Shown here: in pieces, positions 14,758-57,355 of the stretch
How the letters are laid out: every line of letters begins with the position of its first letter
How positions within the stretch are numbered: position 1 is the first letter of the stretch
Made by a program: the position numbers and the translations under genes
DNA from: Zancudomyces culisetae HAW-14-8
Taxonomy: Eukaryota; Fungi; Kickxellomycota
Direction: 5' to 3'
Assembly (NCBI GenBank): GCA_052426225.1
Contig: JBNJNM010000021.1
Coordinates: 1-64,000, forward strand
DNA length: 64,000 nt
Notes under the pieces: model-generated
What the model was told of the DNA's origin: nothing
Databases searched by the model: none
Seen by the model: the letters and a program-made list of their open reading frames with translations, nothing else

Positions 14758-16885
14758 CAACAGCCATCTTTTGTGGAATATTCTGTACATACTTTTGAAC
14801 TATAGTTGAAGCATATTTGATTCAGGCTTTGTGAAATACCAAATTCCTGCTTAAAATATGCAACAATTTAATGTGTATTTTTCTTAACAGGTTTATTGAA
14901 TATTACTGATATGCGTGTACTTTAGTATATTTAGTTAAGGTTTTTAATTTCGATTTACTTGAAAAAGAAGTATAGCGGTTTACAATTTTAGTATGGTCTA
15001 ATTCAAATATTTACAAAAAGTTTAGTTGCTATATACTACAATAAGCATTACTGAGGAACATTGAATTGGCATAAAAACACATCACATTTTAGCATTAAAG
15101 TTTCAAGCGTGTTATTGAGTGTAAATCAAATATTCAAATATTCAAACCAAAAAAAAGAATTGAAGATTATATGCAGATTAGTTCCATGACATTATTTTCA
15201 CTATTTTTCATAGCATAACTTTAATTTTTCTCATTCTATCATTATACACAGCTATTCTATTTATGCTACAACTATAGCCTGACTACATTTATTTTGAATG
15301 GATATCATGAATATGTATAATTTACGTTTAGCCTACTTCACTTAGCTACAATAAGCTTATAAATTTGGTTGATCAAAAAAACTAAAAATGAATGAATGGT
15401 AGCTTATAATGCAACTTTACTCAACTATTGTTCTAGTGTTTTTTGTATTGAATCTTTTGTTCTGGAGTGTGTGCTACTTTAGCTAAAGAGGATCTTATTA
15501 CTATTTTTATGAAACACCCTCAAATAGTTCAAATATGTACGGCAATGTTTTTTGCATAAATTGAGCTGCACAGCAATCTGTTAATCAATTCTCAAAGTTT
15601 GATCTCCACTAAGTGCTAACTAACTACATGTCATAAACGATTTGTTACTATTTTTTCAATCTGATAGCTCTTAAAACCTAACAGGTTAGTATATCATAAA
15701 ATACAATAAATATATTAGATTTGATAATCTAGTCATATGATATTCGTATAGCGACTTACACACTTGGAGTTATGCATCATATGCACTACTACCTTTTCAA
15801 CTAGTAATTTCTCAACATTTGCCAAAGGTTGATTGACTGTTTTAAAACGCAGTAGATCATAATTTATTGTTTTGACAAAATTAACAAAATAGCTTATAAC
15901 TTTACTTTTACAACACTCGTCTATACACATTATACTTTGATTTATACTCTAGACTTGTTCAAAACAAAAAAGTATATAAATCCAGCTGGTTTGGAGAATA
16001 TTTTAAAAATTAAGAAGAATAACAATTCAAATATCTACCAGATTATAATTATTAACTGACAAAATGAAGACCATTATAATCGGAACAGCAGCTTTGGGAC
16101 TAACCTTTGCAAACAGCATGGGTGACTTGTCTTTACGCCAACACAATAGATACCCAATTGGACCAAACAGACTTTGTTCTTGTCGAAATCGCAGCGCTAG
16201 AATGAAGGTCGAAGTGTTCAAAGAGAAAAATCTCCAAAGTCCAGGTGAAACCCTAAATATAAGACCAAACAGATGTGTCTCATTACCAAGTGCCCTATCA
16301 CTTCGATTTGACGATGGACAACCAGGGCGCGGATGGGCTGCACTATGCCACAGTAATGACTGTAGTGGAAAGTGTACAACTATAAGTAGAAAAGCCTGGC
16401 TTTACCCATATGATGTGGAAGCTGACAATGTTGGAGGACCTGCAAACTCTATGATTTGGTTCCTAGCATAGTTAGAGTCAGAATTCGACTATTTTTAACG
16501 TATGGATATTTGATTTAGAGATAGAAAATCTTTTAAATATTAGAACCGAAATCTATGAAATAAACACGTTTAGTGAAGTTCGTCAACATTAAATTATGAT
16601 GTTTGGAGCATATTTGAAAAGTGGTTTTACTAGAAATAAATTTCAAATCGGGTATGACCAGGCATTATTTAACAGCCAGTAGATTTTACAGTTTGAAAGA
16701 ATGTATATTCATAAAAGGTGTAAGGATTCTGTCTGACATCTTTTATCACACTGAATGTTTTAATATAGATTGATAAATATGTTCAGCATTTATCTTCTCA
16801 AACTTCTATAATAGTTTTCAGTGTTAATTAAAGAGGTAAAAATGTGACGCATAATTATCTCATATAAGTAAATACCCGTAATATG
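14758..16885 (+). repeat. Segmental duplication 1, copy a (direct repeat of 55228-57355)
   Basis: About 2.1 kb colinear and roughly 90% identical by eye, including the 16064 gene with its promoter and 3' flank. Confidence 0.93.
16064..16471 (+). CDS. Small secreted Cys-containing protein, beta/gamma-crystallin-like family member 1
   Basis: Signal peptide; TATA at ~15973; GWAALC-HSND-CSGKC...SMIW signature; 103/135 aa identical to 56533-56940. Confidence 0.88.
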   Translation: MKTIIIGTAALGLTFANSMGDLSLRQHNRYPIGPNRLCSCRNRSARMKVEVFKEKNLQSPGETLNIRPNRCVSLPSALSLRFDDGQPGRGWAALCHSNDCSGKCTTISRKAWLYPYDVEADNVGGPANSMIWFLA

Positions 16886-21536: not shown

Positions 21537-22480
21537 ATTACCAGGTCATCAATTTGATGCTCAACAACACTCGAGTTAAGACCAAGCAGAAGAAATATCT
21601 GAGCCCGAAGACCAAGTTCCTACAGTGGCTTTCTACATCTTCAATCTCCATAGAAAACGTAACAGTCGTTGACGTTATCAACTATCTGGAGCAGCAGCGG
21701 AAGGCGCTAAACTGGAGACTCGGAACAGTCAAGAACTACAAGTCCGCCATTCTTGACATAACCAGTGATTGGGCTTCTTTCAGTGACGATCCACTAATGA
21801 AAGAGTATCTCAAACAACTATCTTCATCAAACGTCAGATTCTTTGACATATCGCTTTATGACATCAGTCCAATCATTGACCACATCTGGAAACTTGGGCC
21901 TAACTCCAGAATGTCAAAGTATGACTTGAAAGCAAAACTATGCTGGCTCATAGCCATCTGTGGCTTTCTCAGGCCAAGCGACATTGAGAGGATTGACGAC
22001 AGCAAGACGTCAGTGACAAGAGAATACATCAAGTTTATTATTGTTGGACCAAAGGAGAAACGCAATGGAACTCCAATTGAAAAAGTTTCTATAATCCATG
22101 CACACTCTGACAAAAAATTATGTCCGGTTGAAACTTATCAGGTTTACAAAAAGCGGATTGCGGTTACACCTTGCGTAAAACCACATCCTTTGCTCGACGG
22201 AAACTCAATATCCTATCTCATCAGGAGTCTCAAGGACCACAGTACTAACATTGGAGCACAGCGTATTAGCAAGCACATTAACAAACTTATGTCGCTTATA
22301 CCATTACCGCCAAACGCTAAAGTACCAAAGGCAAGAGCACTTGGATCAAATCGTGCTACTTCATCAGGTGCAACATACGATGATGTTATTACCCAAGGAT
22401 TTTGGGCAAGCAGAGGAATATTTGATACATACTATCAGTTATCACGTAGAACAAGAGAAAATTTGACATTTACGTATTAA
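20672..22480 (+). CDS. DIRS tyrosine recombinase (true start uncertain; YR homology mainly from ~21500)
   Basis: LRPSD (catalytic Arg), PKEK, LCPV, KAR, GFWAS and FDTYY (catalytic Tyr); overlaps the RT ORF as is usual for DIRS. Confidence 0.85.
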   Translation: MERSSEGMERPELPPRDSGSGSLHRRERLPLGDSYWSEPVLRNMDQSTVQAPDQRQGATSHIQGYQDAPGKGQECGCILRQQHLHQLCQETGRDQITQPARHIGTDVETLHQQRDQGTGPVRTIHYESGRRLIPAYFADRMVDIGKSVSKDSKILWSSRYRHVCEQHQSQTEHICELEILPPSSQNQRLQPQLDSVEESIHVPIVESDPAYHPEDPSGENHSDSDHAVLEISSVVSGPEEPVNCTANQDSSVSSYPRPEKRKSSDNAQQDMVTYGLAVKRARYQEAGLDYQVINLMLNNTRVKTKQKKYLSPKTKFLQWLSTSSISIENVTVVDVINYLEQQRKALNWRLGTVKNYKSAILDITSDWASFSDDPLMKEYLKQLSSSNVRFFDISLYDISPIIDHIWKLGPNSRMSKYDLKAKLCWLIAICGFLRPSDIERIDDSKTSVTREYIKFIIVGPKEKRNGTPIEKVSIIHAHSDKKLCPVETYQVYKKRIAVTPCVKPHPLLDGNSISYLIRSLKDHSTNIGAQRISKHINKLMSLIPLPPNAKVPKARALGSNRATSSGATYDDVITQGFWASRGIFDTYYQLSRRTRENLTFTY

Positions 22481-23220: not shown

Positions 23221-25063
23221 ATTTTATAAAGTACTGATGAGATTTTAGTTGCGAAAATTCTAACATTTAATAATGAATTCGTGGTAAAGAATTGCTCAAG
23301 AAAAGATTATGAAGTTATATAAAGAGTAGGTAGGATTTAATTTTAACCGTGCATTTTCATGTCAATTTATTATTCTTTATTCAACTAAACATACTAATTA
23401 AGTTTAAAATTAAATTCATTTATAAATGGGAAATATGGTATTAATGGTTTTCACAAACCATTCTACAATTATGATTATTAAAATACCATGTAGCTGTAAA
23501 TCTAATAGGTAGTCTTTTCACAACTTGAATGAAATAGTCACATGATATATTTTATAGAATCTACAACATCTTTCAACAAATGAATACGTTGCAAGCTTAA
23601 CCAATTGTATAATACTTTAATCCGAAGATTACTAGAATTATATTTATTATTTTTGATATGTTGAAGTCAATTAACAATTGCGAAATTCGTAATTCAGAGC
23701 AAAACACCTGAATAAGGCCCAAATTATAAACTTAACTGCCTGTATGAGAAAACTCTACAATTTAAAGCTTTTTACCATTTATAGCTACATATAATAAAAG
23801 GTTATCTTTTTCCTATCACTTAATTTTCTGGATAGTAGGTAAAAAGGTTCAAAGAATTTAGATGGAGTGGTTTACATTTAATTTAAAAGAACGAAAGCAC
23901 TTTTTAATACTTTTTGAAAGTTAAGTATAACTGAACAGCAAGAATAGTTTGATTTACTAAACAGATGAAAAAAGTGTTATTTATTATAAATAAGAAAATA
24001 ATATATTAATAATATTAATGTCTCGACTTTTGAGAAATTATTGAATTTATTTCATAATATGAATGTTAATAGTTGGAATATTTTAAAATATTGAAAAATA
24101 ATACAAGGCCTATTTCATTATCTACTTATGAGAGAACAAAGTCGAGTTTAGCCTAAATAGACGATGCATACATTAATAACAAAATATTAAACATATTGGA
24201 TTTCTCATCAGTTGTAATTTGTAAGTTAATTTTATTGATACTCTTATTTGACAGTTATGCATTTGAGTTTGTTCTATAAAATTAATAAAATTTTTAGAAA
24301 AGTTAATTTGTTGCATCTGAACATTATAATAGTACACAATATTGTTAATTATAAACTATAGTTGTTTTACTCGAGTATATCTTAGTAGCCAATAGCCTCC
24401 AAGTAGGGCATAAAACATTTCTACTAGATTAAAACAGCAACCAAAAATAAAACATCTATAGAGTCTGATCTAAACTACTTTAGGTTTCTCAATAGACTGC
24501 AACTATGGAAATTAGTACTACAATCAACAGATTAAAGAAGCTAAGATGAGATGATTTTATCGGGGTTTTTATTTGTATAACTTTTTATTTTAGTGATATT
24601 TACTTTACGATTCAAATCAGTTACACTGTTTTTCCTCGATTAATGAATACATTTTAATAACAATTTTTGATAGTCCATATGTGTTCGATATACTTTAGAT
24701 ACAATAGCATATTTACATTAAGAAAATTAATAGACTAATTGATTTCATATACAAAGTTAAATTACATTTTAGGTACTTCACTACCAAAAATCTAGAGTTA
24801 AGCGGTCTCCATAGATATATTAAGTTGTTTTATAATTTGTCTATAATATCACTAAAAATACAATATATACTTCAAAGATCTTCAAATCAGCTTTAATTTA
24901 ATATAAAAACAAATTCTGAGAATATATTTTTGTAAAGTTTTTTTATGCTATGCTATGAAATAGTAGCTAAATTAAATGTGAATGATATAATGAAAATAAG
25001 AGTAACTATGCAAATTTAAATGCGTTCTTGACGGCTCGTGAAGTAATGCACTTTCATCACTTA

Positions 25064-25486
25064 TCAAATTGTCCAATAAACTGAATTTGCAAGCCCTCCA
25101 ATATCTTTCTGCATATCTCCGGGGGTATACCAGATTTGTCTTGGCAGGGCCCGGCAGTAACCATCGCAGTTTGTTCCAGTGCAGAACATTATTGTTCCTT
25201 CACCAGGCGTACCACCATTAAGCAAGCAGGAACCAGTAGTTGGCATGACATAGCAACGATTTGGATTAATTATTTTTGTACCAATATAATTTCCCATTAA
25301 TCTTTGTGCAAACATTCCAATATTTAAAAACTTGTCAGGGTATTGCTTTTTATTGTCTCCATAGCAGATTTTGCGATCTTCATCATCTTGTCTTTTAGAA
25401 ATTGTCGTCTGGGTATCTGGAATGCTAGCACCAGCTACAAGCTTTGAGGCAATCAAAATTGCGGTTGTCAACAAAATATTTACCAT
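25064..25486 (-). CDS. Small secreted beta/gamma-crystallin-like family member 2
   Basis: Signal peptide; KR (Kex2-like) site; PNRCY; GTIMFC-TGTN-CDGYC...SVYW. Confidence 0.9.
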   Translation of the reverse strand: MVNILLTTAILIASKLVAGASIPDTQTTISKRQDDEDRKICYGDNKKQYPDKFLNIGMFAQRLMGNYIGTKIINPNRCYVMPTTGSCLLNGGTPGEGTIMFCTGTNCDGYCRALPRQIWYTPGDMQKDIGGLANSVYWTI

Positions 25487-27944
25487 CTTATTTTATTTTT
25501 TGATTATTTCAAGCTATTCACCTTTTATCTAGGATAAAATTCTAAACTTTTTTGAATTGTAGAGATAGGATTCATTAAAAAAACTTGGACTTTTTATACT
25601 TTTTGTTGTTGTGCTCCTCTTCTTTGTAAGTATAATGGTGTATAGAATTAAAATTTACTAGTGAAAATAGCTAGATAGCTGGTAACAATGACTTACAACT
25701 ATTGTCATGATATCCGAATCAATGACGAATTCATTCCTCTATCAGCTCACTCAGAATAGTAGAACTATATTTAGATTATTATATTTATAAGTGTGTTAAT
25801 AGCTATCAGAGTTAACATGTAATAAGATAACTTGTTTTATGATACCTAATTTCAATGCTTTTACCTTGATGTTCTCTAAAAATTAAAGAAAAACAAAGGC
25901 TTTTACTTAGAGAACCAATATTTTTGGTCGTTTGCATTTGAACGAAAGCGAAAAAAAATTATTTTTAGTAATCTATTCCGGTTTTTGAGGGAAATGTGAA
26001 ATCTAAAAAAAGACATATCACAGTATAAACGGTACCGGTGGCATTCAGGGTTTGTAAATTATTTATCATGTACTAGATGACCCGAAGTACGCTTGTTTTT
26101 TTTTGAAATTGCATATTCTATTTTAAATCATATCGTAATCAGCATTTATAATTTGTTGAATATGTTGCATATACCTATATAATTGTGATACGAGAATATT
26201 TGTAATGATAGATGTACAGAGTGCTTACTGATTGGAAGCGTCATTCAAATTCTAGCGCTTAATTGATTGGCCCATTTTAAGCAAATATGGTTATTAACCT
26301 CACTTCGGGATTATAGTACGAATTATATTTATGCCTTTAGAGATAATTGACATATTAATTAGGCTCTTCTACATGTTAATTTCAAGACTAGGTAGGCGCA
26401 TGATTCTAATTTAGGTAATTTAATCTTTTTATAAATAAGATTTAATGAGCAACTTTTAAAAACAATCTTAAATGTTGAAGGAAAAAGGATCAACATTAAA
26501 AACTCGCAATTTCACGATAAATCGAACCGACACCTTGGAGTATACTATCGAAAGTATGAGGCTAGGGTAGTCTCCTGGTTGACCATGCCACATATAAAGA
26601 TTAATATTACTTTATTGGGCTTTGTTTACTTATAATTATAAGCCAAGTGTACTCTTTTTGATGAAAACATGTAAATATTTATTCATAAGGCTATTATTTA
26701 GACACTCAAAACAATTTGATTCAGTTCTTTTCTATCTTTGTAAGAATGTTTTGCACGTTACTTTAGCTTTCAAATAGCTTGGTATCGAGATATATTAAGG
26801 CCATTATTATTAGGTAAACTGAAAGCATCATTAGCATATGAATACATCACATTGTGTGATTTATAATACACCTTGATTTAAAACACGGGTTAATTCTACT
26901 CACTTATTAATAGAAAATGCCTTTGAATAATTTATTAGTGTAAGTGCTGTCTTTCTCGAGGCTAGAAACTCGAAATCTATCTTGTCTTTTAAAATGCTCT
27001 TTGGCCTTGTTAGTTATCTGGTGTATTCGTTGGTGAGAGGTATAGAAACGTAATTTTAGGTTCAAAACAGATTTGTAATTATTACCAATCTAATAATTAA
27101 ACCCAATGGCCACCTCTTGTCGGGAAGTATCGAAATAAAGAGTATTATTCCTTGGAATTGCAGGAACGGATCATTTTGTCGGTTTTACGTCTTTTTCAAG
27201 GACGTATAATAGTTTATGGGTCTATTTTCTCTTTTTAATGGGAATTTTGTGGAATAGTGTTATTTTTAGATGAATTAAAATATCGCTTTAGATAAACCTT
27301 TTCAAATAGTAAATCAAATTTGGATGTTATTATTTATTTATTTCAATTACGTAACCGTTTTTACTTGTTGGGATTTAATGCTTTTAAACTATCGGAACTG
27401 CGAAATCAAAAAATCGGAACAGAATTAGTGTTGATTAGATAAAAATTACAAAATTATTTTCAATCTACCAGTTACAGTAAGGGCACAATTCATGAGCAGA
27501 AAAAATTGCTCTACTACCTTATAAGATTACTAGTTCTAGTATACCACTACATTGTAAGCGAGGCTAGCAAATATAGAAAAGTTGTCAAAGATTAAAATTA
27601 GAAGCTATGAATTACATAACACCTAAATTATCATTTTTTAGTACACTTTCATTCAGCCTAATGCTTTGAAACTAGATGCTTTCTCGACTTTTTAAAATTG
27701 AACACTTTTTAAAATTTATTGAAAACACTACAATTGGACACCTTACGCAGTTTCAAGAATAGTATAGATGTAACAGAGAGAAAGGAAAAAGTGTAAAACG
27801 TTCAGAATATTGTTGAAACAAGATGTACATCAACAATTGAAGTTTCTTTATACAAGACAAAAAGACATATTATAGTCATCATCATTTTCATACTGCATCA
27901 GCGCATTAGCTTGTCACACTTTTATTTAAATTCGAGTATCAAAT

Positions 27945-28304
27945 ATGGTAAAGTCAACACTAGCACTTCTTGCGGCCGTAGTTTCTACGTTTCCAGTAAA
28001 TGCTAAATTCCAAACCCTGCATGCCAAAATATTTTCAGGATATCGATTTTCTGGTGCTGTCGTGGATGAACTCCAGATGGTAAAACATCAATGTTATAAC
28101 ATTAACCCTGGCAGATCGGGGCAATACCTTAACCCCACTGATGGATCAGGAGCACTTATAATGTGTAGGGAAAGAAATTGTCAGGGTGTATGTACGGCAA
28201 ACACCGATTTTATAAGAACCGGTCTTTGGGACTTCTATCTTGATGTCGGTACAAGCGTTCTTTCTATGAAATGGATAGCATTCGGTCTTGCCACCAACGA
28301 ATAA
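27945..28304 (+). CDS. Small secreted beta/gamma-crystallin-like family member 3
   Basis: Signal peptide ending VNA; FSGYRFSG Greek-key motif; GALIMC-RERN-CQGVC...SMKW. Confidence 0.9.
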   Translation: MVKSTLALLAAVVSTFPVNAKFQTLHAKIFSGYRFSGAVVDELQMVKHQCYNINPGRSGQYLNPTDGSGALIMCRERNCQGVCTANTDFIRTGLWDFYLDVGTSVLSMKWIAFGLATNE

Positions 28305-28617
28305 ATTATTACTTTAGAGCATAGTTTAGTTGGTAGTAAATTTGTTTTTATTTAATTTGAACGTATACTTGAATAAAGTTACAATTCTATTATCAAAATG
28401 ATTAGCATATTAACTTTAATATAGTTAACAAAGTGACACAAACACACAAAGATATAATTAATTTGAGTACAAAATTTACCTTGTCACAAATATACTAAAT
28501 ATCACAAAGATTAGTAGGTAAAAAACTCCAAATAATATCTACTAAGCATTTCTTACTCGACTTTCTCAAAGATTCTATACCTACTGGTAGTTTGTTAAAA
28601 GAGGTTATTCTAATATA

Positions 28618-29017
28618 TTTAGTTGAATGTATTGAAAACTTATTATTATTACACAAAACACCAGATATAATTATGTTTACTTAATCTTTATATAATTTTG
28701 AAACCTTTCCTAGATCATAAATATTTTGACTCGAAAAAATTTCCAAGTGTTAGCGATTTAGTATCTGACTGCGATCACTAAATTTATTTAGTAATTTCTA
28801 ACACGATAATAAAATTATTTTTGAAAATGAAGGGTTAAAAGTATGTAAATGGTTTTTCTTAATAAAAACAAAAGTGAAAGTAAAAGTATATTACCGATTA
28901 TTTTTCTACTTTCTTGATTCCTTACATTTATTTGTGTGCTAGATTGGGCAGAACTGGGTGAAACATAATTTTATCTGGATATTCGCAAAATAAATATAAT
29001 TTTCATTTCAAACTAAA
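28618..29017 (-). mobile_element. Solo DIRS 3'-terminal module (MITE-like)
   Basis: Diverged reverse-orientation homologue of 22529-22940 with the same ~60-bp inverted ends (TTTAGTTGAAT...GAAAACTTATTATTATT); absent from the sister duplication copy at ~41153. Confidence 0.75.
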
Positions 29018-29515: not shown

Positions 29516-29940
29516 TTAATTGTACGGAGTAATCCAAAAATAAGATACCGCATAGACTTGACCAATATAAAACCACGAATCATAAATCTCATTTCCACTA
29601 CTCATATTATGGACATAACAGCTGTCACTACATTTAATTCTCTACAGACCATAAAGGCACCTCTATTCTCATTCACACCAACCATTTTAACAGATGAAAA
29701 ATTACTCTCATTGTAGCATGTGTTTGGTTTGACATTAAAGGTACCTTTTAGGGCTTTGAAACCACCACCAACAAATAACTGAACTGCTATATTATCACGC
29801 CTAAAGTTTTTTTCGATAAGATTGGTTTCTAAAATTTGATCCTCATAGGCTGTTTGTAAGGTGTGGTAATTTGCACTTTGCGGCAAAGCTAAATAAAGTA
29901 TACCAATGCTGAATATACTGAGAATTACTGACTTGATCAT
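29516..29940 (-). pseudogene. Family member 4, with a 1-bp frameshift near 29633 (pseudogene or assembly error)
   Basis: Signal peptide; FVGGGFKA; PNTCYN; GAFMVCREL. Adding one base restores xCSDSCYVHNMSSGNEIYDSWFYIGQVYAVSYFWITPYN*, completing the family signature. Confidence 0.82.
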
Positions 29941-34125: not shown

Positions 34126-34518
34126 TTATTCGTTTGGGACTTTTCCTGTTGATACCCATCTGATAGAAAGGGGGCCTGACTTGAGATCTTGAGGGAAATT
34201 CCACACACCCTGCGTTATAAAATCGGTGTTTACTGTGCATACACCGCTACAGTTTCTTTCTCTGCACATCAATAATCCTCCTGATTTATCAGTGGGATTA
34301 AGAAACCTTCCTGAGCCACCCTGCTTAATGTTATAGCATTTATGCTTTCTCATCTGGAAATTGTTTATTACACTTCCAGAATGGTCAATTGCTGAATATA
34401 TTGTAGCTTGCAAGGTTGGTCGAGAAGACATGGAATTGCAACCGCAATGACCTGATACTAGGAGTGTCTGAGTAGCTGAAAGAAGCTGGATGGCCAATGT
34501 GTAACTTGAAACGCGCAT
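34126..34518 (-). CDS. Small secreted beta/gamma-crystallin-like family member 5
   Basis: Signal peptide; clear paralogue of 27945/40507 (KHKCYNI, LNPTD.SG, MCRERNCSGVCT.NTDFI, SIRW, terminal NE). Confidence 0.9.
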   Translation of the reverse strand: MRVSSYTLAIQLLSATQTLLVSGHCGCNSMSSRPTLQATIYSAIDHSGSVINNFQMRKHKCYNIKQGGSGRFLNPTDKSGGLLMCRERNCSGVCTVNTDFITQGVWNFPQDLKSGPLSIRWVSTGKVPNE

Positions 34519-37546: not shown

Positions 37547-37972
37547 TTATGGGAATGACCAGTAAACTGAATTTACAAGACCACCAATTCCATACTGCAT
37601 ATCTGCGGGGGTATACCATACTTGTCTTGATTCGGATCGGCAACTACCATCACATCTTTTTCCAGTGCAGAACGTTATTGTTCCCTCGCCGGGTGTGCCA
37701 CCATTTAGCTTACTTGAATCAATAGGTGGCACCTCGTAGCACCGATTTGGAGTAACTGTTTTGAAACCAATTCTACCTCTAAAGTAACTTTGTGAATACA
37801 ATTCAAGGTCCAAAGTTTTTCCGGGAATCTGATAAACACTACCCACTGAACAGAAATTGCGGTTGTCGTCATCTTGTCTTTTAGAAATGTTTGTCTGGGT
37901 ATCTGGAATGCTAGCACCAGCTACAAGCTTTGAGGCAATCAAAATTGCGGTTGTCAACAAAATATTTACCAT
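37547..37972 (-). CDS. Small secreted beta/gamma-crystallin-like family member 6
   Basis: Paralogue of 25064-25486; YSQSYFRG Greek-key motif; GTITFC-TGKR-CDGSC...SVYW. Confidence 0.9.
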   Translation of the reverse strand: MVNILLTTAILIASKLVAGASIPDTQTNISKRQDDDNRNFCSVGSVYQIPGKTLDLELYSQSYFRGRIGFKTVTPNRCYEVPPIDSSKLNGGTPGEGTITFCTGKRCDGSCRSESRQVWYTPADMQYGIGGLVNSVYWSFP

Positions 37973-40506
37973 CTTATTTTATTTTTTGATTATTTCAAGC
38001 TATTCACCTTTTATCTAGGATAAAATTCTAAACTTTTTTGAATTGTAGAGATAGGATTCATTAAAAAAACTTGGACTTTTTATACTTTTTGTTGTTGTGC
38101 TCCTCTTCTTTGTAAGTATAATGGTGTATAGAATTAAAATTTACTAGTGAAAATAGCTAGATAGCTGGTAACAATGACTTACAACTATTGTCATGATATC
38201 CGAATTAATCGGAAAATCGTTCCTCTATCAGCTCGCTCAGAATAGTACAACTATTTTTAGATCATGAATTAAAAAGTTGATTAATAGGTATCAGAGTTAA
38301 CATTTAATGGGCATAACTTTTTTTATGATACCTAATGTCAATGCTTTTACCTTGATGTTCTCTAAAAATTAAAGAAAAACAAAGGCTTTTACTTAGAGAA
38401 CCAATATTTTTGGTCGTTTGCATTTGAACGAAAGCGAAAAAAAATTATTTTTAGTAATCTATTCCGGTTTTTGAGGGAAATGTGAAATCTAAAAAAAGAA
38501 ATACTACAATGAGTCTAAGAAACACATTTATCACAAACTAGCACAACTCCTAACAACAAAAAAAGACTTATCACAGTATAAACGGTACCGGTGGCATTCA
38601 GGGTTTGTAAAGTATTTATCATGTACTAGATGACCCGAAGTACGCTTGTTTTTTTTTGAAATTGCATATTCTATTTAAATCATATCGTAATCAGCATTTA
38701 TAATTTGTTGAATATGTTGCATATACCTAAATAATTGTGATACGAGGATATTTGTACATGGTTTATGTACCGAGTTCTTTTGATTGGAAGTGTTATTCAA
38801 ATTCTAGCGCTTAATTGATTGGCTTATTTTAAGCAAATAAGGTTATTAACCTCACTTCGGGACTATGTACGAATTCTATTCAAGCCTTTAGAGATAATTG
38901 ACATATTAATTAGGTTCCTCTACATGTTAATTTCAAGACTAGGTAGGCGCATGATTCTAATTTAGGTAATTTAATCTTTTTATAAATAAGATTTAATGAG
39001 CAACTTTTAAAAACAATCTTAAATGTTGAAGGAAAAAGGATCAACATTAAAAACTCGCAATTTCACGATAAATCGAACCGACACCTTGGAGTGTACTATT
39101 GAAACTCCAGTATTTACATACTAAATAAAAACAAGTATGAGGCTAGGGTAGTCTCCTGGTTGACCATGCCACATATAAAGATTAATATTACTTTATTGGG
39201 CTGTGTTTATTTATAATTATAAGCCAGGTGTACTCTTTTTGGTGGAAACATTAGAGTATTTGTCCATTATAGCTATTATTTAGACATTCAAAATAATTTT
39301 ATTCTGTTCTCTTCTATCCTTGGATGATATTTTACACGTTACTTTAGCTTTCAAATAGCTTGGTATCGGGAATTATTAAGGTCATCATTATTAGGTAAAC
39401 TGAAAGCACCATTAGGATAAAATACATCACATTGTGTGATTGGTAATACATCTTGATTTAGAACATGTGCTAATTCTACTCACTTATTAATACCAAAACG
39501 CTTTTGAATAATTTATTAGTGTAAGTTCTACCTTTCCAGAGGCTAGAAACTTGAAATCTACCTTGTCTTTTAGAACGCCCTTTGGTCTTGTTGGGTATGA
39601 GGTGTACTCCTTAGGAAGAGATCAAAAAACGTAATTTTAGATTTATAACAAATTTGTAATTATTACCAATCTAATAATTAAACTCAATGAATGCTTCTTG
39701 TCGGGAAGTATCGAAATAAGGAGTACTATTCCTTGAAATTGCATGAACGGATCATTTTGTCGGTTTTACATCTTTTTCAAGGACGTATAATAGTTTATGG
39801 GTCTAATTTCTCTTTTTAATGGGAATTTTGTGGAATAGTGTTGTTTTTAGATGAATTAAAATATCGCTTTAGATAAACCTTCTCAAGTAGTAAATCGATT
39901 TTGAATGTGTTATTTTTATTATTTTTATTACATAACCGCTTTTACTTGCTGGAATTAAACGCACTTAAATTATCGGAACAGAGTTAGTGTAGTATTAGAT
40001 AAAAATTACAAAATTATTTTCAATCTATCAGTTACAATAAGGGCACCATTCATGAGGAGAAAAAATTGCTCTACTACCTTATAAGATTACTAGTTCTAGT
40101 ATACCACTACATTGTAAGCGAGGCTAGCAAATATAGAAAAGTTGTCAAAGATTAAAATTAGAAACTATGAATTACATAACACCTAAATTATCATTTTTTA
40201 GTACACTTTCATTCAGCCTAATGCTTTGAAACCTAGATGCTTTCTCGACTTTCTAAAAATTGAACACTTTTTAAAATTTATTGAAAACACTACAATTGGT
40301 CACCTTACGCAGTTTCAAGAATATAATAGAGGTTACAGAGAGAAAGGAAAGAGTGTAAAACGTTCAGAATGTTGTTGAAACAAGATGTACATCAACAATT
40401 GAAGTTTCTTTAAGAACCACAAAAAGACATCTTTTAGTCATCATCATTTTCATACTGCATCAGCGCATTAAATTGTCACAATCATAATTAAAATCAAGAA
40501 TCAAAT

Positions 40507-40866
40507 ATGGTAAAGTCAACACTAGCACTTCTCGCGGCCGTAGTTGCCACGTTTCCAGTAAATGCTAAATTTCAAACCCTGCATGCCAAAATATTTTCAG
40601 GATATCGATTTTCTGGTGCTGTTGTGGATGAACTCCACATGGTAAAACATCAATGTTATAATGTTAGACCAGGCAGATCGGCGCAATACCTTAACCCCAC
40701 CGATAGATCAGGAGCACTACTGATGTGTACAGAAAAGGACTGTTGTGGTGTATGTACAACAAACACCGATTTTATAAGAACCGGTCTTTGGGACTTCTAT
40801 TTGGATCTCCCCACACCGCCCCTTTCAATGAAATGGGTAGCATTTGGTCAAGCTGCTAATGAATAA
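40507..40866 (+). CDS. Small secreted beta/gamma-crystallin-like family member 7
   Basis: 100/119 aa identical to 27945-28304. Confidence 0.9.
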   Translation: MVKSTLALLAAVVATFPVNAKFQTLHAKIFSGYRFSGAVVDELHMVKHQCYNVRPGRSAQYLNPTDRSGALLMCTEKDCCGVCTTNTDFIRTGLWDFYLDLPTPPLSMKWVAFGQAANE

Positions 40867-43596
40867 ATTATTACTTTAGAACGTAGTTTAGTTGGCAGTA
40901 AAGTCGTTTTTATTTATTTGGGAGGTATACTTTAATAAAGTATCAATTGTTTCCAAACTGATGAGCATATTAACTATAACTAGTTGAAAATATGACTAGC
41001 TCACACAAAGATGAATTTCACTTTGCCATAAATTTAATAAATATCAAAAAGATTAGTAGGTAAAAAATCTCATATAATATCTACTATGTAATTCTTTGTC
41101 GACTTTCTAGAAGATTACATACCTACTGGTTGTTCGTTCAAAGAGAATATTCTATTTTGAGTAGATCTATGATAACAACCTTGGTTTGAACGATTCTATG
41201 TCAGAAACTCAGTACGTTCAGCTAAACTAAGGATAGTAACTTTGACCATTCCTACACTACCACTTTCCTTCTTTTTTCCTGTCTTTATTATTTCCAGAAT
41301 ATGTTCAAAGAATATTAACTGGTCTGAAGTTCATTCATTTGACTCGGCATAAGATCTTATTGCCTTTATTTTGTTAGAATTATATCTTCAACCTTTAATA
41401 CAACTATTAAATTTTAAATTGTAGGTTCACTACAGTCCTGTAAATTTCATGACATTATACGTTGTATTTCTATTTAAAACCAAATATTAGAATTAATAAA
41501 GCATATTTTATCAATTAGTCTATATCCATGATTTAAATAGTCAAAAAAAATACAACGAGACACAAGCATATAGTATGCTGATAACTTGTTTTTTCTTTTC
41601 TATTTCCAGTATTTGTGTACGCAAATGATGGAAATGGTGGGATCTGGTTTATATAATATTTGTATAAAAAAATAAATACCAATTAAACATATTTCGGTCT
41701 TGTGTATTATTTTTATTATCAATGTTGAGTAATGTACCAAAATGAGTTAGAATTGGAACCAAATAAATAAATTTTATTGATTCTTGTTAGATATAATGAT
41801 ATAAAGCTTTGATTTAAATGAATCGTTTATCCTCCCATCCCAAACTAAATCTGTGGGATCTTTTCTCATTTCAGTTCACAACAGCTGTATAAGGTACTGT
41901 ATTTAGTTTTAAATCTACGAGGTATTAAATATATATTTTTATTATCGAATGAAACATTCAAATTATAATAATATCAAAAAAAACTATAAGAATTGATATA
42001 TCTAGTTATGCTAGAATTGTGTATCTATATTTTAACAGTGCTTTTCTGATAGAATGGTGTTTTTCTTACAGATATCTACCAGATTAGTTAAATCAGTAAA
42101 GATAAAATATTTTAAGACAAACGAGAATATACAACTATCATTGGCGTTGAAGTTAATTTGTCTCTTCAGTGCGATAGAAATAAATTATTTTTAGGGATAA
42201 CCCTATAATATTAAATATTCTTTCCGATATGAAATTAAAATCTACTAAAAAACAATTTATGCTAAAAGTTAAAAGAGTAAAAGAAGCATTTTACACATCC
42301 AGTACATAACTTTGTATGATATTGGTTATATGTGTTGTGGTTAATCCATTTCAAATATCTACTTATATGTCTAGCGTTAATTTCAAATTACGTTTATCTA
42401 GTCGATAAGGTACAATCAAGACATTTGCATTGCTAGTAATCTACAAAGAGATGGATACTCTACTCAAAATATCAGACCAACAACCCAAATGATTTTCATT
42501 TAAACACTTTGAATTTTTGTGTAAAATTTAGAGGAAATTAGTGTATCTCTGTACCAACCACCATCAGTAAGTTGTTATAATAATAGACTGCAGTGTTCAA
42601 ATCAGTAGTCATTTAGCTAGAAGCTATTTTCTAAGGTCTAATCCACCTGTCGATTGATGCTGAAAAAAAATTTTATAAGCATTTATATAGGATATGACAT
42701 ACTATTCTTCAAAAATCTGGTAAGAATTGTGTCGAATCATCGAGCCTATCCTAATAGTATTAGTCAAAATAAAACTAAACTCATAAATCAGCTACTTTTG
42801 TAAACCCTTTTAATTCTACCGGAATATATGCCACTTGAAAAGAGCATGTAAAGTAGATAAATTGAGCAATACTTTACAGGGGCATTATAAATTGCTGCAT
42901 AGAATATGCAAATGATTTAATACACAATTTATGAGAGGTTAGGTGCATAACCCATAAGCTAGGAAGACCACTAATTCTCAAGAAATAATAAAAAGCAAAT
43001 CAAGCCAATTCATTTTATTTACAGTTGGTGGATAATTAAGATGCCACTCTTATGGAACAACTGCTACAAGTTTAGAAAAAAATTACATTGAGCCACTCGA
43101 ATAACCATTTATTATATTAAAAAGAGTGGATATGCAAACTACCCTTAATATGGGTAGCTTTAAATGCTTGGATGTGGATTTTTATGTTATTCGATAATTA
43201 AAACCAACATAAACTGTTTTTTTTCTAAATGGAAATACCAGTATTCTTAAATTCATATATTCCAATACACTGCTAAACCTCAGCAAAGCTGGAAAATATG
43301 TACAGCACCATAATTTTGAACTTGTCATTTTACACTGTTGAAGTGTGAATTTGCGGATTATGATGCACTTTAAAAAACAAAAATATAAAGTATTAAGCTA
43401 GTTGGAATATTCAAACCAAAAAAGTATATAAATCCCTGGTTTCCCTCCAGTTTTTCGAGTACTTTATCAATTACATTCATACTTTGCATAACATAGTAGC
43501 AATCTTAAAATAATTTTTCAAAGTTGAAACTGCAGGTAAAACATCTCGACTGACAATAAAAAAACAACAGTACAGCATATAGTAAAAACACACAAA

Positions 43597-46629: not shown

Positions 46630-47090
46630 ATGTTCAAGTCAGTATTAGTCAGTCTTTGCTCCTCGGTTCAACCTTAGCCAGTGCAGTAAACATGAGCGGT
46701 AACCAACAGAATCAGAACAATGATCTTGCTAATTCCGAACACAACAACAATCTCTCTGGCTGTGAATTCAACGATATGCATCGTCGCTGCAAGGCCAAGA
46801 GAACAACTGTTAGATTGTACAAGGCTGCCGGTTTTGTTAACAGATACGAAAAGCGCAGTATCAGACGTGGAAAGTGCTACAACACAAGAAAATTCGGATC
46901 AATTAAGGTCGGAAGAAAGAGTGGATTGGATAAACCAGGAAAGGGAGTAATCTTGGTTTGCAAGGATAAGGATTGTACCGGTAAATGTCAGATAGTCCGT
47001 AGATCATCAGCCAAGACTATTTCCAATATATCCGAAGTTGTAGGAAGAAGAGCTATTTCATTCGCTTGGCTCAGGGTTAAGAGAACCTAA
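46630..47090 (+). CDS. Family member 8, highly cationic; 1-bp frameshift in the signal-peptide region near 46655
   Basis: ATG at 46630 in AAAATG context; one extra T gives MFKSVLVSLLLLGSTLASA. YKAAGFVN, GKCYN, GVILVC-KDKD-CTGKC...SFAW. Confidence 0.82.
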
Positions 47091-55227: not shown

Positions 55228-57355
55228 CAACAGCCATTCTTTTGTGGAATATTCTGTACACGTTTTTGAATTATAGTTGGAGCATATCTGCTCCAGGTTT
55301 TGTGAAATACCAATTTTTTGCTTTTCAACTACGCCTGAGTTTGATGTGTTCTTTTCTCAACGAGGAGTATTGAATATTACTGAATTGAGTTTATTTTATA
55401 TTATTAGTTAATATTTTTAATTTCGATTTACTTGCCAAAAGTATAGCAGTTTACAATTCTAGTATGGTCTAATAAAATATTTACAAAAAGTTTAGTTGCT
55501 ATATACTACAATAAGCATAACTGAGAATAATTGACTTGTATAAAAATACATCCCATATTTGTATTAAAGTTTCAAGTTTGTTATTGAGTGTAAATCAAAT
55601 ATTCAAATATTCAAACCAAAAAAAAAGAATTTATGATTTATGATTGATGATTGAATGTACATTAGTTCCATGACATTATTTTCACTATTTTTCATAGCAT
55701 TACTCTAATTTCTCTCATCCTACCATTATATATACAACTGTTCTATTTTATGCTACAACTATAGCCTGACTACATTTATTTTGAATGGATAACATGAATT
55801 TGTATAATTACGTCTAGTCTACTTCATTTAGCTACAATAAGCCTATAAATTTGATTGATCAAAAAAACTAAAAATGAATGAATTTAGCTTATAATGCAAC
55901 TTTACTCAACTATTGTTCTAGTGTTTTTTGTATTGAATTTTTTGTTCTGGAGTGTGTGCTACTTTAGCTAAAGAGGATGTTTATTACTATTTTTTTCGAA
56001 ACCCCCTCAAACAGTTCAAATATATACAGCAATGTCTTTTGCATAAATTGAGCTGCACAGCAATCTGTTAATCAATTCTCAAAGTTTGATCTCCACTAAG
56101 TGCTAACTAACTACATGTCATAAACGATTTGTTACTATTTTTTCAATATGATAGCTCTTAAAACCTAACAGGTTAGTATATCATAAAATACAATAAATAT
56201 ATTAGATTTGATAATCTAGTCATATGATATTCGTATAGCGACTTAACACTTAGAGTTATGCACCATGTACACTAATACCTTTTCAACTAGTAATTTCTCA
56301 ACATTCGCCAAAAGACGCATGACTGTTTTAAAACGCAGTAGATCGTAATTTTTTATTTTGACTAAATTAACAAAATAGCTTTTACCTTTACTTTTACAAC
56401 ACTCGTCTCTACACATTATACTTTGATTTATACTCTAGACTTGTTCAAAACAAAAAAGTATATAAATCCAGCTGGTTTGGAGAATATTTTAAAAATTTAA
56501 GAAGAATAACAATTGAATTATTAACTAAAAAAATGAAAACTATTATAATCGGAACTGCAGCTTTGGGACTAACCTTTGCAAACAGCATGGGAGACGTGTC
56601 TTTACATCAGCACAACAGAAACTCAATCAGACAAAACAGACTTTATTCTAGCCAAAATCACAGCGCTAGGATGAAGGTTGAAGTGTTTCAAGAGCAATAT
56701 CTCCGCAATCCAGCCAAAACAATAAATATAAGACCAAACAGATGTGTCTCATTACCAAGTGCCCAATCTCTCCAGTTTGATAGCGGACAACCAGGACGCG
56801 GGTGGGTTGTACTGTGCCACAGTAATGACTGCAGTGGAAAGTGTGTAACTGAACGTAGAAAAACCTGGCTTTACCCACAAAACATGGATGCTGACAAGGT
56901 TGGAGGCCCCGCCAACTCTATGATTTGGTTCCTAGCATAGTCCGAGTCTGAATTCGTTCATTTTTAATGTATGGATATTTGATGTAGAGATAGAAAATAT
57001 TTTAAATATTAGAACCGGAATCCATGAAATAAATATGTGTAGTGAAGTTCGTCAACAATAAATGATAATGTTTGGAGCAGAGTTGAAAAGTGGTTTTGCT
57101 AGGAATACATTTCAAATTGGTACAACCTAGATATTACTGTAACAGCCAGTAGATTTTACAGTTTGAAAGGATGTATATTTAAAAAAAGTGTAAGGATTTC
57201 ATGTGACATCATTTATCATACTGAATATTTTAATATAGATTAATAAATATGTCCAGTATTTATCTTATCAAACTTATATAATAGCTTTCAGTGTTAATTA
57301 AAGGGGTAAAGGTGTGTCACATAATTACCTATTCAAAGTAAATATCCGTAATATT
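55228..57355 (+). repeat. Segmental duplication 1, copy b
   Basis: Colinear with 14758-16885, about 40.5 kb away. Confidence 0.93.
56533..56940 (+). CDS. Small secreted beta/gamma-crystallin-like family member 9
   Basis: Paralogue of 16064-16471; GWVVLC-HSND-CSGKC...SMIW. Confidence 0.88.
   Translation: MKTIIIGTAALGLTFANSMGDVSLHQHNRNSIRQNRLYSSQNHSARMKVEVFQEQYLRNPAKTINIRPNRCVSLPSAQSLQFDSGQPGRGWVVLCHSNDCSGKCVTERRKTWLYPQNMDADKVGGPANSMIWFLA

What the first reader, a model, noticed from the sequence alone, without database searches (positions are those of the whole stretch)
16064..56940. Subtelomeric set of nine divergent secreted proteins sharing a beta/gamma-crystallin (killer-toxin/MiAMP1-like) signature
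Seen: nine signal-peptide genes (16064, 25064, 27945, 29516, 34126, 37547, 40507, 46630, 56533) fall into about five subfamilies that look unrelated by simple identity. All share hydrophobic-x-hydrophobic-[FY]-x4-..., C[YV]...S, G-x4-C-x4-C-x-[GD]-x-C and a terminal S-x-x-W. In some members the first half is a textbook Greek-key motif (FSGYRFSG, YSQSYFRG = [FY]-x4-F-x-G) and the second half repeats it with Cys in the aromatic positions. Known: single-domain secreted crystallin-like folds include Williopsis killer toxin HM-1, Streptomyces SKLP and plant MiAMP1. Inference: a lineage-specific, telomere-linked effector or antimicrobial family that I do not recognise as described.
Basis: partly seen in the sequence, partly recalled or inferred. 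Interest (0 to 1): 0.88.

Follow-up and report, generated by a model that had tools for sequence, protein, structure and literature searches.

The report
Subtelomeric secreted crystallin-fold protein family
The mosquito-gut fungus Zancudomyces culisetae carries at least 150 copies, mostly near chromosome ends, of a gene for a small secreted protein with the beta/gamma-crystallin fold also seen in a yeast killer toxin; nine copies lie in this window, and their function, possibly against competing gut microbes, is untested.

Summary
The window starts with a telomere and contains exactly nine loci of one family. Seven are intact; two carry frameshifts. They fall into five subfamilies, 16-29% identical between them, sharing C, S, G, C-x4-C-x-G-x-C and S-x-x-W.

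The organism is Zancudomyces culisetae. A family profile finds at least 150 copies in the genome; 95 lie within 80 kb of a contig end, against 8% expected. Outside this species I found relatives only in Smittium mucronatum. All are annotated as hypothetical, and no Pfam family matches.

AlphaFold models of two subfamilies (pLDDT 87 and 85) each match only beta/gamma-crystallin superfamily members at the top of two structure searches: Z 8.9-6.6, including MiAMP1 (about 7) and WmKT (7.0 and 5.3). The fold reading is therefore supported.

Typical members have a signal peptide, a polar pro-region often ending in a dibasic site, and a usually cationic domain with two inferred disulfides. Median dN/dS is 0.34, so the genes are under purifying selection.

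Function is untested, and no RNA data could be listed. My best guess is a killer-toxin-like or antimicrobial arsenal.

This is a new sequence family within a known kind: crystallin-fold secreted fungal proteins. First-stage readers of the scan flagged this family repeatedly elsewhere in this genome, and one follow-up report called it a real crystallin-fold family.

The parts
1..2070 (.). Telomere: (CCCTAA)n, with a short tract of CCCTAT variant repeats at its inner edge (about 1960-2070).
   Evidence: Read directly; GC 0.50 and GC skew -1.0. Ten of the 13 other contig starts checked carry the same repeat.
16064..16471 (+). Family member g16064, 135 aa, subfamily 1. Signal peptide, then a linker with a C-x-C and an R-S-A-R site, then the crystallin-fold domain (16202-16468).
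   Evidence: ORF; profile E 7.7e-34. AF2 model m220dc8bc1d50 has domain pLDDT 94-97 and a disordered N-terminal 28 aa. Fold hits.
25064..25486 (-). Family member g25064, 140 aa, subfamily 2. Signal peptide, K-R site, acidic linker, then the domain (25067-25327) with one extra Cys pair.
   Evidence: ORF; profile E 1.2e-33; alignment.
27945..28304 (+). Family member g27945, 119 aa, subfamily 3. The signal peptide is followed directly by the domain (28017-28301). The first Greek-key signature is F-x4-F-x-G.
   Evidence: ORF; 97% identical to a Z. culisetae hypothetical protein. AF2 model mf024fb1a55eb has pLDDT 87 and pTM 0.76. Fold hits.
29516..29940 (-). Family member g29516, subfamily 4, interrupted by a frameshift. 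Profile positions 3-54 lie in frame 29605-29961 and positions 55-91 in frame 29519-29641.
   Evidence: Sequence; split profile match; intact paralogue L066:662-1111:-. Read only as pieces or with X at the break.
34126..34518 (-). Family member g34126, 130 aa, subfamily 3 (45-47% identical to g27945 and g40507). It has a C-G-C in the linker; domain at 34129-34413.
   Evidence: ORF; profile E 4.4e-34; identity matrix.
37547..37972 (-). Family member g37547, 141 aa, subfamily 2, paralogue of g25064 (64% aa identity); domain at 37550-37813.
   Evidence: ORF; profile E 6.3e-34; duplication profile.
40507..40866 (+). Family member g40507, 119 aa, subfamily 3, paralogue of g27945 (84% aa identity); domain at 40579-40863.
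   Evidence: ORF; profile E 1.4e-35.
46630..47090 (+). Family member g46630, subfamily 5. The frame changes inside the signal-peptide region near 46655. The ORF 46656-47090 carries an N/Q/D-rich pro-region, a K-R site directly before the domain, and a very basic domain (net +21, pI 11.1) at 46806-47087.
   Evidence: Sequence; profile E 2.4e-30; charge.
56533..56940 (+). Family member g56533, 135 aa, subfamily 1, paralogue of g16064 (76% aa identity); domain at 56671-56937.
   Evidence: ORF; best profile hit in the genome, E 5.3e-36; duplicated flanks 15504-16907 and 55991-57377.
25061..28630 (.). One copy of a roughly 3.5-kb duplicated two-gene module (g25064 and g27945, divergently transcribed). 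The other copy is 37547 to about 41200 (g37547 and g40507).
   Evidence: Direct repeats D1-D3 and D7-D9. The central promoter and 5' gene ends are mostly 85-100% identical (a few 100-bp bins at 79-84%). The mature-domain coding and 3' flanks are only 55-80% identical.
37547..41200 (.). Second copy of the duplicated two-gene module.
   Evidence: Multi-kb stretches are also 92-94% identical to other chromosome ends: C11 right, C22 left, C16, C12 right and C8 left.

Best explanation
SHOWN. The nine loci belong to one large gene family of the mosquito-gut fungus Zancudomyces culisetae. The genome holds at least 150 copies, concentrated in shared, recombining subtelomeric blocks.

A typical gene is intronless and encodes three parts: a signal peptide; a short polar, acidic or His-rich pro-region, often with a C-x-C and ending in a dibasic K/R-R site; and an 88-97-residue domain. 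The domain is predicted with high confidence to be a single beta/gamma-crystallin-type double Greek-key sandwich. Its first motif keeps the aromatic signature. Its second motif reads C-x4-C-x-G-x-C.

INFERRED. The four conserved cysteines form two disulfides, C28-C57 and C52-C61, that take the place of the aromatic packing. The pro-region is removed by a Kex2-type protease in the secretory pathway. The released domain is compact, protease-resistant and usually cationic, and it acts outside the cell.

MOST LIKELY FUNCTION (untested). The family is a diversified arsenal of killer-toxin-like or antimicrobial proteins for antagonism against other microbes in the larval hindgut. The closest analogues are WmKT, SKLP and MiAMP1. 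Ectopic recombination and gene conversion between chromosome ends generate and reshuffle the variants.

My confidence in the family and fold part is about 0.9. My confidence in the antimicrobial function is about 0.4.
For: Family and copy number:
- The profile finds at least 150 matches, 131 of them without an internal stop.
- 95 of 150 lie within 80 kb of a contig end, against 8% of the genome (p about 3e-65).

Fold:
- Two models have pLDDT 87 and 85, with the domain at 94-97.
- Foldseek's top hits are all crystallins, prob 1.0.
- An independent all-against-representatives search puts only beta/gamma-crystallin superfamily chains in the top 20-21 rows at Z 8.9-6.6. These include WmKT (7.0 and 5.3) and MiAMP1 (6.8 and 7.0).

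Disulfide inference: L041, L046 and L065 lose C52 and C61 together, with F or Y at position 52, while keeping C28 and C57.

Prepro architecture:
- 23 of 50 distinct N-termini have K/R-R within 6 residues of the domain start.
- The mean domain net charge is +6.2, and 44 of 50 are positive.
- The g46630 domain is +21.

Selection: window pairs give dN/dS 0.3-0.55. The median over 110 paralogue pairs is 0.34, and none exceeds 1.

Recombination: multi-kb stretches are 92-94% identical to other chromosome ends. A conversion-like tract lies inside the in-window duplication.

Analogy: crystallin-fold small secreted fungal proteins have been proposed as antimicrobial or effector proteins (10.1101/127746, PMC9447291, PMC10462633).
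Against: - There is no functional, expression or proteomic evidence. No sequencing run could be listed.
- The fold is shared by proteins with very different functions: lens proteins, spore coats, IPSE/alpha-1 and a glycosidase appendage.
- The models match canonical crystallins at least as well as the toxins.
- The Z values of 7-9 lie in the range the tool calls 'middling'. The case rests on the uniformity of the top hits and on the sequence signature.
- Several window members are not cationic: g27945 and g40507 have net charge 0.
- About half of the distinct N-termini lack a dibasic site next to the domain.
- No model coordinates were available, so the disulfide pairing is inferred from co-loss only.
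- There is no sign of gene-wide positive selection.
Confidence: 0.45

Rival explanations
1. The proteins are host-directed effectors or adhesins. They would bind the hindgut cuticle, peritrophic or glycan components, or host immune or digestive proteins, and so promote attachment or tolerance of the fungus. Analogues are IPSE/alpha-1 of Schistosoma and the Ecp-type apoplastic effectors.
For: IPSE/alpha-1 (4el6) is among the best structural matches, Z 8.2 and 7.5. Crystallin-fold candidate effectors are widespread in plant-pathogenic fungi (PMC9447291, PMC10462633). A subtelomeric, diversified, lineage-specific secreted family is the classic pattern for host-interaction genes.
Against: From general knowledge, Harpellales sit on the cuticle-lined hindgut without contact with host cells and are commensals. 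There is no gene-wide positive selection. No binding data or expression in the host are available.
Confidence: 0.25
2. The proteins are protease inhibitors that protect the thallus from larval digestive proteases. The analogue is the Streptomyces metalloproteinase inhibitor family I36, which has a related Greek-key fold.
For: Protein-language-model neighbours include clusters carrying PF03995 Inhibitor_I36 and PF00030 Crystall, at scores 0.86-0.89. These are below the tool's 0.9 mark, so they are a lead only. A disulfide-constrained C-x4-C loop is present in every member. The gut habitat is rich in proteases (general knowledge).
Against: No member matches PF03995 even at E up to 10. No I36 structure appears among the top 50 structural hits. 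The similarity to SMPI's reactive-site loop comes only from my memory and was not tested.
Confidence: 0.1
3. The proteins are structural, calcium-dependent components of the spore, wall or holdfast. Analogues are Protein S of Myxococcus, spherulin 3a of Physarum and the abundant perithecial protein of Neurospora.
For: Those proteins are among the structural matches: 1hdf Z 7.6 and 7.8, 1nps/1prs about 7, and 5z6e 7.0 and 7.1. They are the best-known non-lens roles of the fold in microbes.
Against: The N/D-N/D-x-x-S/T-S calcium-binding motif is absent from all 43 members. A structural role does not explain 150 divergent copies in subtelomeres. The prepro organisation and high positive charge are atypical for those proteins.
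Confidence: 0.07
4. The copies are mostly non-functional passengers of subtelomeric segmental duplication, and the ORFs are decaying relics.
For: Two of the nine window copies are frameshifted. Nineteen of the 150 genomic matches contain a stop. Copies ride on duplicated blocks.
Against: 131 of 150 domain matches are open. The four Cys, Gly, Ser and Trp are nearly invariant across copies that are 16-29% identical. dN/dS is 0.34, well below 1. Relatives are retained in Smittium mucronatum.
Confidence: 0.03

Closest known systems
Canonical beta/gamma-crystallin domains (lens gamma/beta-crystallins, AIM1/CRYBG, Ciona crystallin, geodin; Pfam PF00030)
   Same: The predicted fold is the same: two Greek-key motifs in one roughly 90-residue sandwich. 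These are the best structural matches, at Z 8.0-8.9, rmsd 2.1-3.0 A and 74-84 aligned residues. The first motif keeps [FY]-x4-[FY]-x-[GN] and the structural Ser. A weak, non-significant profile alignment to betaB2-crystallin (E 0.56) covers motif 1 and the start of motif 2.
   Different: No Pfam Crystall match. The second motif has Cys at both aromatic positions, plus a third Cys. The proteins are secreted, single-domain and disulfide-bonded, and they lack the calcium-binding motif.
Williopsis (Cyberlindnera) mrakii killer toxin WmKT/HM-1 (1wkt) and Streptomyces SKLP (1f53)
   Same: Both are small, secreted, disulfide-rich, basic single-domain proteins with the crystallin-type fold. Structural matches are Z 7.0 and 5.3 for WmKT and 4.2 for SKLP. 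From memory, HM-1 is also made as a prepro-protein.
   Different: No sequence similarity. The family has 4 conserved Cys rather than the 10 of HM-1 (a number from memory). The structural match is weaker than to canonical crystallins. Glucan-synthase inhibition was not tested.
MiAMP1 plant antimicrobial protein (1c01) and the Cladosporium fulvum Ecp4/Ecp7/CfCE44/CfCE72 and Magnaporthe 'cluster 14' crystallin-like candidate effectors
   Same: These are small secreted Cys-rich proteins with a predicted or solved beta/gamma-crystallin fold and no calcium-binding motif. A kexin site precedes the domain in CfCE72. They are lineage-specific and divergent (10.1101/127746; PMC9447291; PMC10462633). MiAMP1 matches at Z 6.8 and 7.0.
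   Different: The cysteine framework differs. By my recollection MiAMP1 has six Cys, and 10.1101/127746 says Ecp4, Ecp7 and CfCE72 share its Cys spacing; here the pattern is C...C-x4-C-x-G-x-C. The host lineage is different (Zoopagomycota, an insect-gut commensal). The copy number is far higher and the copies are concentrated in subtelomeres.
IPSE/alpha-1 of Schistosoma mansoni (4el6)
   Same: It is a secreted single-domain crystallin-fold protein of a symbiont or parasite living in an animal host. It matches at Z 8.2 and 7.5.
   Different: There is no sequence similarity. From memory, IPSE/alpha-1 is a glycosylated dimer with a nuclear localisation signal. It is not a large gene family.

Membership tests
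beta/gamma-crystallin superfamily (fold level) | One domain made of two four-stranded Greek-key motifs forming a beta-sandwich | tested here: met
   Two AF2 models (pLDDT 87 and 85) show the same order of strands; the first also has three short helical turns. The top 20-21 hits of the Foldseek-independent search, and all Foldseek top hits, are superfamily members covering the whole domain.
beta/gamma-crystallin superfamily (sequence signature) | [YFW]-x4-[YF]-x-G hairpin signature plus a conserved Ser in the FIRST motif | tested here: met
   In 43 members, position 8 is F/Y in 41 and position 13 is F/Y in 32. Position 15 is G in 12 and N in 12. Ser36 is present in 39.
beta/gamma-crystallin superfamily (sequence signature) | The same aromatic signature in the SECOND motif | tested here: not met
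   The aromatic positions are Cys: C52 in 40 of 43 and C57 in 43 of 43. G59 and S85 are invariant. The three members without C52 carry F or Y there. The spacing is kept but the residues are replaced.
Pfam Crystall (PF00030) and related crystallin Pfam families | Match to the family HMM above the gathering threshold | tested here: not met
   No crystallin family matched for the nine window proteins at E up to 1, nor for any of 43 members at E up to 10.
Microbial calcium-binding beta/gamma-crystallins (Protein S, spherulin 3a, APP) | N/D-N/D-x-x-S/T-S double-clamp calcium-binding motif | tested here: not met
   0 of 43 members contain the pattern.
WmKT/HM-1 and SKLP killer-toxin group | Detectable sequence relationship or shared cysteine framework | tested here: not met
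   A profile search of all PDB sequences returns no killer-toxin chain at E up to 10. The family has 4 conserved Cys. Only the fold is similar: Z 7.0 and 5.3, and 4.2.
WmKT/HM-1 and SKLP killer-toxin group | Killing of sensitive yeasts or inhibition of beta-1,3-glucan synthesis | not testable with these tools
   Requires recombinant protein and bioassays.
Peptidase inhibitor family I36 (SMPI; PF03995) | Match to the family HMM | tested here: not met
   No match in 43 members at E up to 10. There is only a sub-threshold language-model neighbour, score 0.86-0.89.
Crystallin-fold small secreted fungal candidate effectors (Ecp4/Ecp7 type) | Small, signal peptide, Cys-rich, predicted beta/gamma-crystallin fold, no calcium-binding motif, lineage-restricted | tested here: met
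   (hydrophobic N-termini; heuristic only, since no SignalP was available). Direct sequence or profile homology to Ecp4/Ecp7 was not tested, because no referenced sequences were available.

The most novel reading that the evidence does not exclude
The subtelomeres of this insect-gut commensal hold a recombination-driven 'cassette library' of more than 150 crystallin-fold toxins. Conversion tracts keep promoters and prepro leaders constant while swapping mature domains between chromosome ends. This would be a killer-toxin counterpart of the var/VSG/MSG contingency systems. It would let the fungus shape the mosquito larval gut microbiota, and it might be exploitable for vector control.
Probability: 0.15. 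Interest if true: 0.8.

Novelty: new variant of a known kind. Interest (0 to 1): 0.55.

Why it matters
Harpellales are widespread residents of mosquito, black-fly and midge larval guts, yet almost nothing is known about the molecules they secrete there. This family is a sizeable fraction of the gene set of Z. culisetae: at least 150 copies in a 27-Mb genome. It is invisible to Pfam and is annotated only as hypothetical. It now has a confident fold assignment, a testable disulfide map and a testable processing model.

If the proteins are antimicrobial, they are candidates for how a commensal fungus holds its niche and influences the larval microbiota of disease vectors. They would also be a new source of stable, small antifungal or antibacterial scaffolds.

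The family extends the crystallin-fold secreted-protein theme from Dikarya plant pathogens to an early-diverging, animal-associated fungal lineage. It also gives a clean example of subtelomeric family expansion with conversion-tract mosaics in a telomere-to-telomere-grade assembly.

Tried and rejected
- Pfam on the nine proteins and on all 43 aligned members: no crystallin, killer-toxin, MiAMP1 or I36 family.
- PDB sequence profile search: only non-significant hits. BetaB2-crystallin scores E 0.56 and an antibody chain E 0.054.
- Word-indexed protein searches: only Z. culisetae hits. These searches are of low sensitivity for this family. The exhaustive HMMER search added one Smittium mucronatum protein. 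It also returned four long repetitive proteins (P0026, P0029, P0034, P0035) that I regard as spurious or unrelated.
- Internal duplication test, first half against second half by hhalign: not significant (probability 3.5%). The 'second half repeats the first' idea therefore holds only for motif spacing and predicted fold.
- Positive selection: pairwise dN/dS never exceeds 1. The 'constant prepro, hypervariable mature domain' look of the 25064/37547 pair is explained by a high-identity tract over the shared promoter and 5' ends. The 3' non-coding flanks are as diverged as the domains. Site-model tests were not run.
- Expression: the look-up of sequencing runs listed no run, so read laying was not used and expression is untested.
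- Disulfide geometry could not be measured, because model coordinates are not exposed. The pairing rests on co-loss of cysteines.
- Complex prediction was not used; no binding claim is made.
- The two frameshifted genes were read only as separate pieces or with X at the break. No repaired version was made.


Full report
WHAT IS THERE

The window is the left end of contig C21 of the assembly. It begins with about 2 kb of (CCCTAA)n telomere repeat. The DNA is about 30% G+C. A 97%-identical database protein identifies the organism as Zancudomyces culisetae, a Harpellales fungus of mosquito larval hindguts.

A six-frame search of the whole 64 kb with the family profile finds exactly these nine and nothing else above noise.

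Seven are intact, intronless ORFs of 119-141 codons. Two are interrupted by frameshifts:
- In 29516-29940(-) the profile match changes frame between profile positions 54 and 55.
- In 46630-47090(+) the frame changes within the signal-peptide region, and the rest of the ORF is intact.

An intact paralogue of the first broken gene sits at another chromosome end (L066). I read the broken genes only as pieces or with X at the break.

ONE FAMILY, FIVE SUBFAMILIES

MAFFT alignments give 45-84% identity within subfamilies and 16-29% between them. The subfamilies are:
- 16064 and 56533
- 25064 and 37547
- 27945, 40507 and 34126
- 29516
- 46630

The eight aligned window domains nevertheless share invariant C26, S34, G45, C50, C55, G57, C59, S83 and W86.

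A profile of these eight recovers at least 150 matches in the 27-Mb genome (189 candidates, 150 scored). E-values go down to 5e-36, and 131 matches have no internal stop.

I fetched 70 loci and extracted 72 ORFs. Reducing them to less than 85% identity gave 41 sequences, aligned as A2 (43 rows with two further window members).

In A2, C28, C57, G59 and S85 are invariant. Y29, S36, G47, C52, C61 and W88 are at least 90% conserved.

GENOMIC DISTRIBUTION

Of the 150 matches, 95 lie within 80 kb of a contig end. Such regions make up 8% of the genome (binomial p about 3e-65). Ten of the 13 other contig starts checked carry the telomere repeat, so these ends are true chromosome ends.

Multi-kb pieces of the window's 23-42 kb stretch recur at 92-94% identity at five other ends: C11 right, C22 left, C16, C12 right and C8 left.

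Inside the window a two-gene module (25064/27945) is duplicated 12.5 kb away (37547/40507). The 16064 gene with its flanks is duplicated at 56533.

An identity profile of the two-gene module is informative:
- The shared divergent promoter and the 5' (signal and pro) ends of both genes are mostly 85-100% identical, with a few 100-bp bins at 79-84%.
- Identity falls to 55-80% through the mature-domain coding regions.
- It stays that low in the non-coding 3' flanks.

The 'constant leader, variable mature domain' appearance is therefore best read as the edge of a recent conversion or recombination tract. It is not faster-than-neutral evolution of the domain.

TAXONOMIC RANGE

An exhaustive HMMER search of 1.84 billion representative proteins gave 34 hits. 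All those I looked up are Z. culisetae 'hypothetical proteins', with one exception. P0004 from Smittium mucronatum has three tandem copies of the domain.

On its contig there is also a neighbouring single-domain gene. The family therefore predates the Zancudomyces-Smittium split.

Four long repetitive hits look spurious or unrelated. No Pfam family matches any member, even at E up to 10.

FOLD

AlphaFold2 with the family alignment gave two models:
- mf024fb1a55eb, the 27945 domain: pLDDT 87, pTM 0.76.
- m220dc8bc1d50, mature 16064: pLDDT 85, with the domain at 94-97 and the 28 N-terminal residues disordered.

The two models have the same strand order.

Foldseek against the PDB lists only beta/gamma-crystallin-fold proteins at the top. 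These include AIM1, gammaB/S/D, betaB2, Protein S, IPSE/alpha-1, hahellin and nitrollin. Probability is 1.0 and TM about 0.6, but E is only 3e-3 to 6e-2.

A search that does not rely on Foldseek (48,161 representative chains) gives the same picture. The top 20-21 rows are all members of this superfamily at Z 8.9-6.6:
- Lens and non-lens crystallins: 8-8.9.
- IPSE/alpha-1: 8.2 and 7.5.
- Spherulin 3a: 7.6 and 7.8.
- Neurospora APP: about 7.
- MiAMP1: 6.8 and 7.0.
- WmKT: 7.0 and 5.3.
- SKLP: 4.2.

Unrelated folds begin at about Z 5.

The tool warns that Z 7-9 alone is middling. What makes the assignment convincing is the uniformity of the hit list, full-domain coverage, agreement between two subfamilies, and the sequence signature.

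The first motif reads [FY]8-x4-[FY]13-x-[GN]15 ... S36. The second reads C52-x4-C57-x-G59-x-C61 ... S85-x-x-W88. A weak, non-significant profile alignment to betaB2-crystallin spans the first motif and the start of the second.

That test is passed.

A profile comparison of the two halves is not significant. The internal repeat is visible only as spacing and fold.

DISULFIDES (INFERRED)

Three members (L041, L046, L065) lack C52 and C61 together and keep C28 and C57. At position 52 they carry F or Y, the canonical aromatic. This co-loss argues for pairs C52-C61 and C28-C57, and for Cys having replaced the aromatic packing residues of the second hairpin.

PRECURSOR ORGANISATION

Among 50 distinct N-termini, all begin with a hydrophobic leader. 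A polar N/Q/D/E-rich or His-rich segment follows, often with a C-x-C.

In 23 of 50 a K/R-R (often R-R-R-R) lies within 6 residues of the domain start. The mean domain net charge is +6.2, and 44 of 50 are positive.

The window members vary:
- 46630 has K-R directly before a +21 domain.
- 29516 has R-R.
- 25064 and 37547 have K-R about 20 residues upstream.
- 16064 and 56533 have R-S-A-R.
- 27945 and 40507 have no pro-region and are neutral.

An anionic pro-piece, a dibasic site and a basic disulfide-rich domain is the usual layout of Kex2-processed fungal toxins and antimicrobial proteins (general knowledge; kexin processing of a crystallin-like effector domain is discussed in 10.1101/127746).

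SELECTION

dN/dS is 0.3-0.55 for the window pairs. The median over 110 paralogue pairs is 0.34, with none above 1. The genes are therefore maintained by purifying selection, somewhat relaxed. They are not decaying repeats, and there is no gene-wide signal of positive selection.

WHAT IT MOST LIKELY DOES

Shown:
- A very large family of predicted secreted proteins, so far seen in only two Harpellales species.
- A crystallin-type fold.
- Concentration in recombining subtelomeres.

Inferred:
- Two disulfides.
- Kex2-type maturation.
- Extracellular action.

For function I favour microbial antagonism in the hindgut, at about 0.4. The proteins would act as killer-toxin-like or antimicrobial agents. 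The reasons are the precursor layout, the prevailing positive charge, the stability-oriented design, and the single-domain secreted precedents of this fold (WmKT, SKLP, MiAMP1).

The rivals are:
- Host- or cuticle-directed effectors or adhesins (0.25; IPSE/alpha-1 and Ecp-type precedents).
- Protease inhibitors (0.1; only a sub-threshold language-model lead to family I36, and no HMM match).
- Calcium-dependent structural spore or wall proteins (0.07; the calcium motif is absent in 43 of 43).
- Non-functional passengers (0.03; contradicted by conservation and dN/dS).

Expression could not be examined, because no sequencing run was listed.

COMPARISON WITH WHAT IS KNOWN

At fold level the family belongs to the beta/gamma-crystallin superfamily. 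At sequence level it fails membership of Pfam Crystall. It lacks the microbial calcium motif, and its second signature has Cys in place of the aromatics. It shares neither sequence nor cysteine framework with WmKT, SKLP or MiAMP1.

Crystallin-fold small secreted proteins are already recognised as a recurrent class of fungal candidate effectors:
- Ecp4, Ecp7, CfCE44 and CfCE72 (10.1101/127746).
- Magnaporthe cluster 14 (PMC9447291).
- The 'Crystallin' orphan-effector family, present in most of 20 fungal species surveyed (PMC10462633).

The Harpellales genome papers I checked do not mention this family (PMC5954228).

I therefore rate it a new variant of a known kind. It is an undescribed sequence family with a distinctive Cys-substituted second Greek key. 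It occurs in an early-diverging, animal-gut fungus and has undergone an unusually large subtelomeric expansion.

EARLIER NOTES OF THIS SCAN

First-stage readers flagged the same family repeatedly in other parts of this genome. One follow-up (s1-639029) called it a real gut-fungus-specific family of secreted crystallin-fold proteins. My independent tests agree.

VERDICT

The function is open. Interest is moderate (0.55).

Noticed in passing
window 19500-22500: A G+C-rich island (48% against about 30%) holds a retroelement. One ORF has reverse transcriptase and RNase H domains and a weak Dam-methyltransferase-like hit. A second, overlapping 602-aa ORF has no Pfam match. The layout resembles a DIRS-type element.
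   Followed up: partly
window 32672-33497: The Gly/Tyr-rich secreted ORF 33072-33497 has a signal peptide whose coding sequence is about 80% identical to that of family members 27945 and 40507. There are also patches of upstream similarity. The leader seems to be reused on an unrelated cargo (compare note s1-676171).
   Followed up: partly
window 43597-44409 (+): A 270-aa ORF with a hydrophobic leader and a His close to the likely signal-peptide cleavage point, a Ser/Thr/Pro-rich tail and a Cys-rich C-terminus. It has no Pfam match. The N-terminal His is reminiscent of copper-binding secreted proteins. This is my impression only and was not tested.
   Followed up: no
window 31263-31802 (-): A 179-aa Cys-rich ORF with a signal-peptide-like start. 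It has no Pfam match and does not match the crystallin-like family profile.
   Followed up: no
window 49408-49926 (-): A 172-aa low-complexity ORF with a hydrophobic N-terminus. His/Gly/Arg-rich ends flank an Ala/Val/Gly/Thr-rich core. No Pfam match.
   Followed up: no
Pro-regions of family members, e.g. window 16160-16200, 34414-34450; L069, L047, L038: Many linkers carry a C-x-C (CSC, CGC, CKC), sometimes next to long His runs. In g56533 both Cys are replaced together relative to g16064. This suggests a vicinal pair or a metal site in the pro-piece.
   Followed up: no
L084:2818-3171 and L084:7858-8748 (Smittium mucronatum contig LSSL01000440.1): Two neighbouring family genes in another genus. 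One has a single domain and one has three tandem domains. The terminal Trp of the S-x-x-W motif is Tyr in all four domains.
   Followed up: partly
P0029 (1657-aa protein from the representative library): A long protein of unchecked origin with many repeats containing F-L-Y-x-S-x-x-C-x-G hit the profile weakly (E 2e-7). The repeats look like single Greek-key hairpins with Cys at the second aromatic position. The relationship is unclear.
   Followed up: no
window 1960-2110: The inner edge of the telomere switches from CCCTAA to about 15 CCCTAT variant repeats, then to degenerate copies, before unique sequence starts.
   Followed up: no
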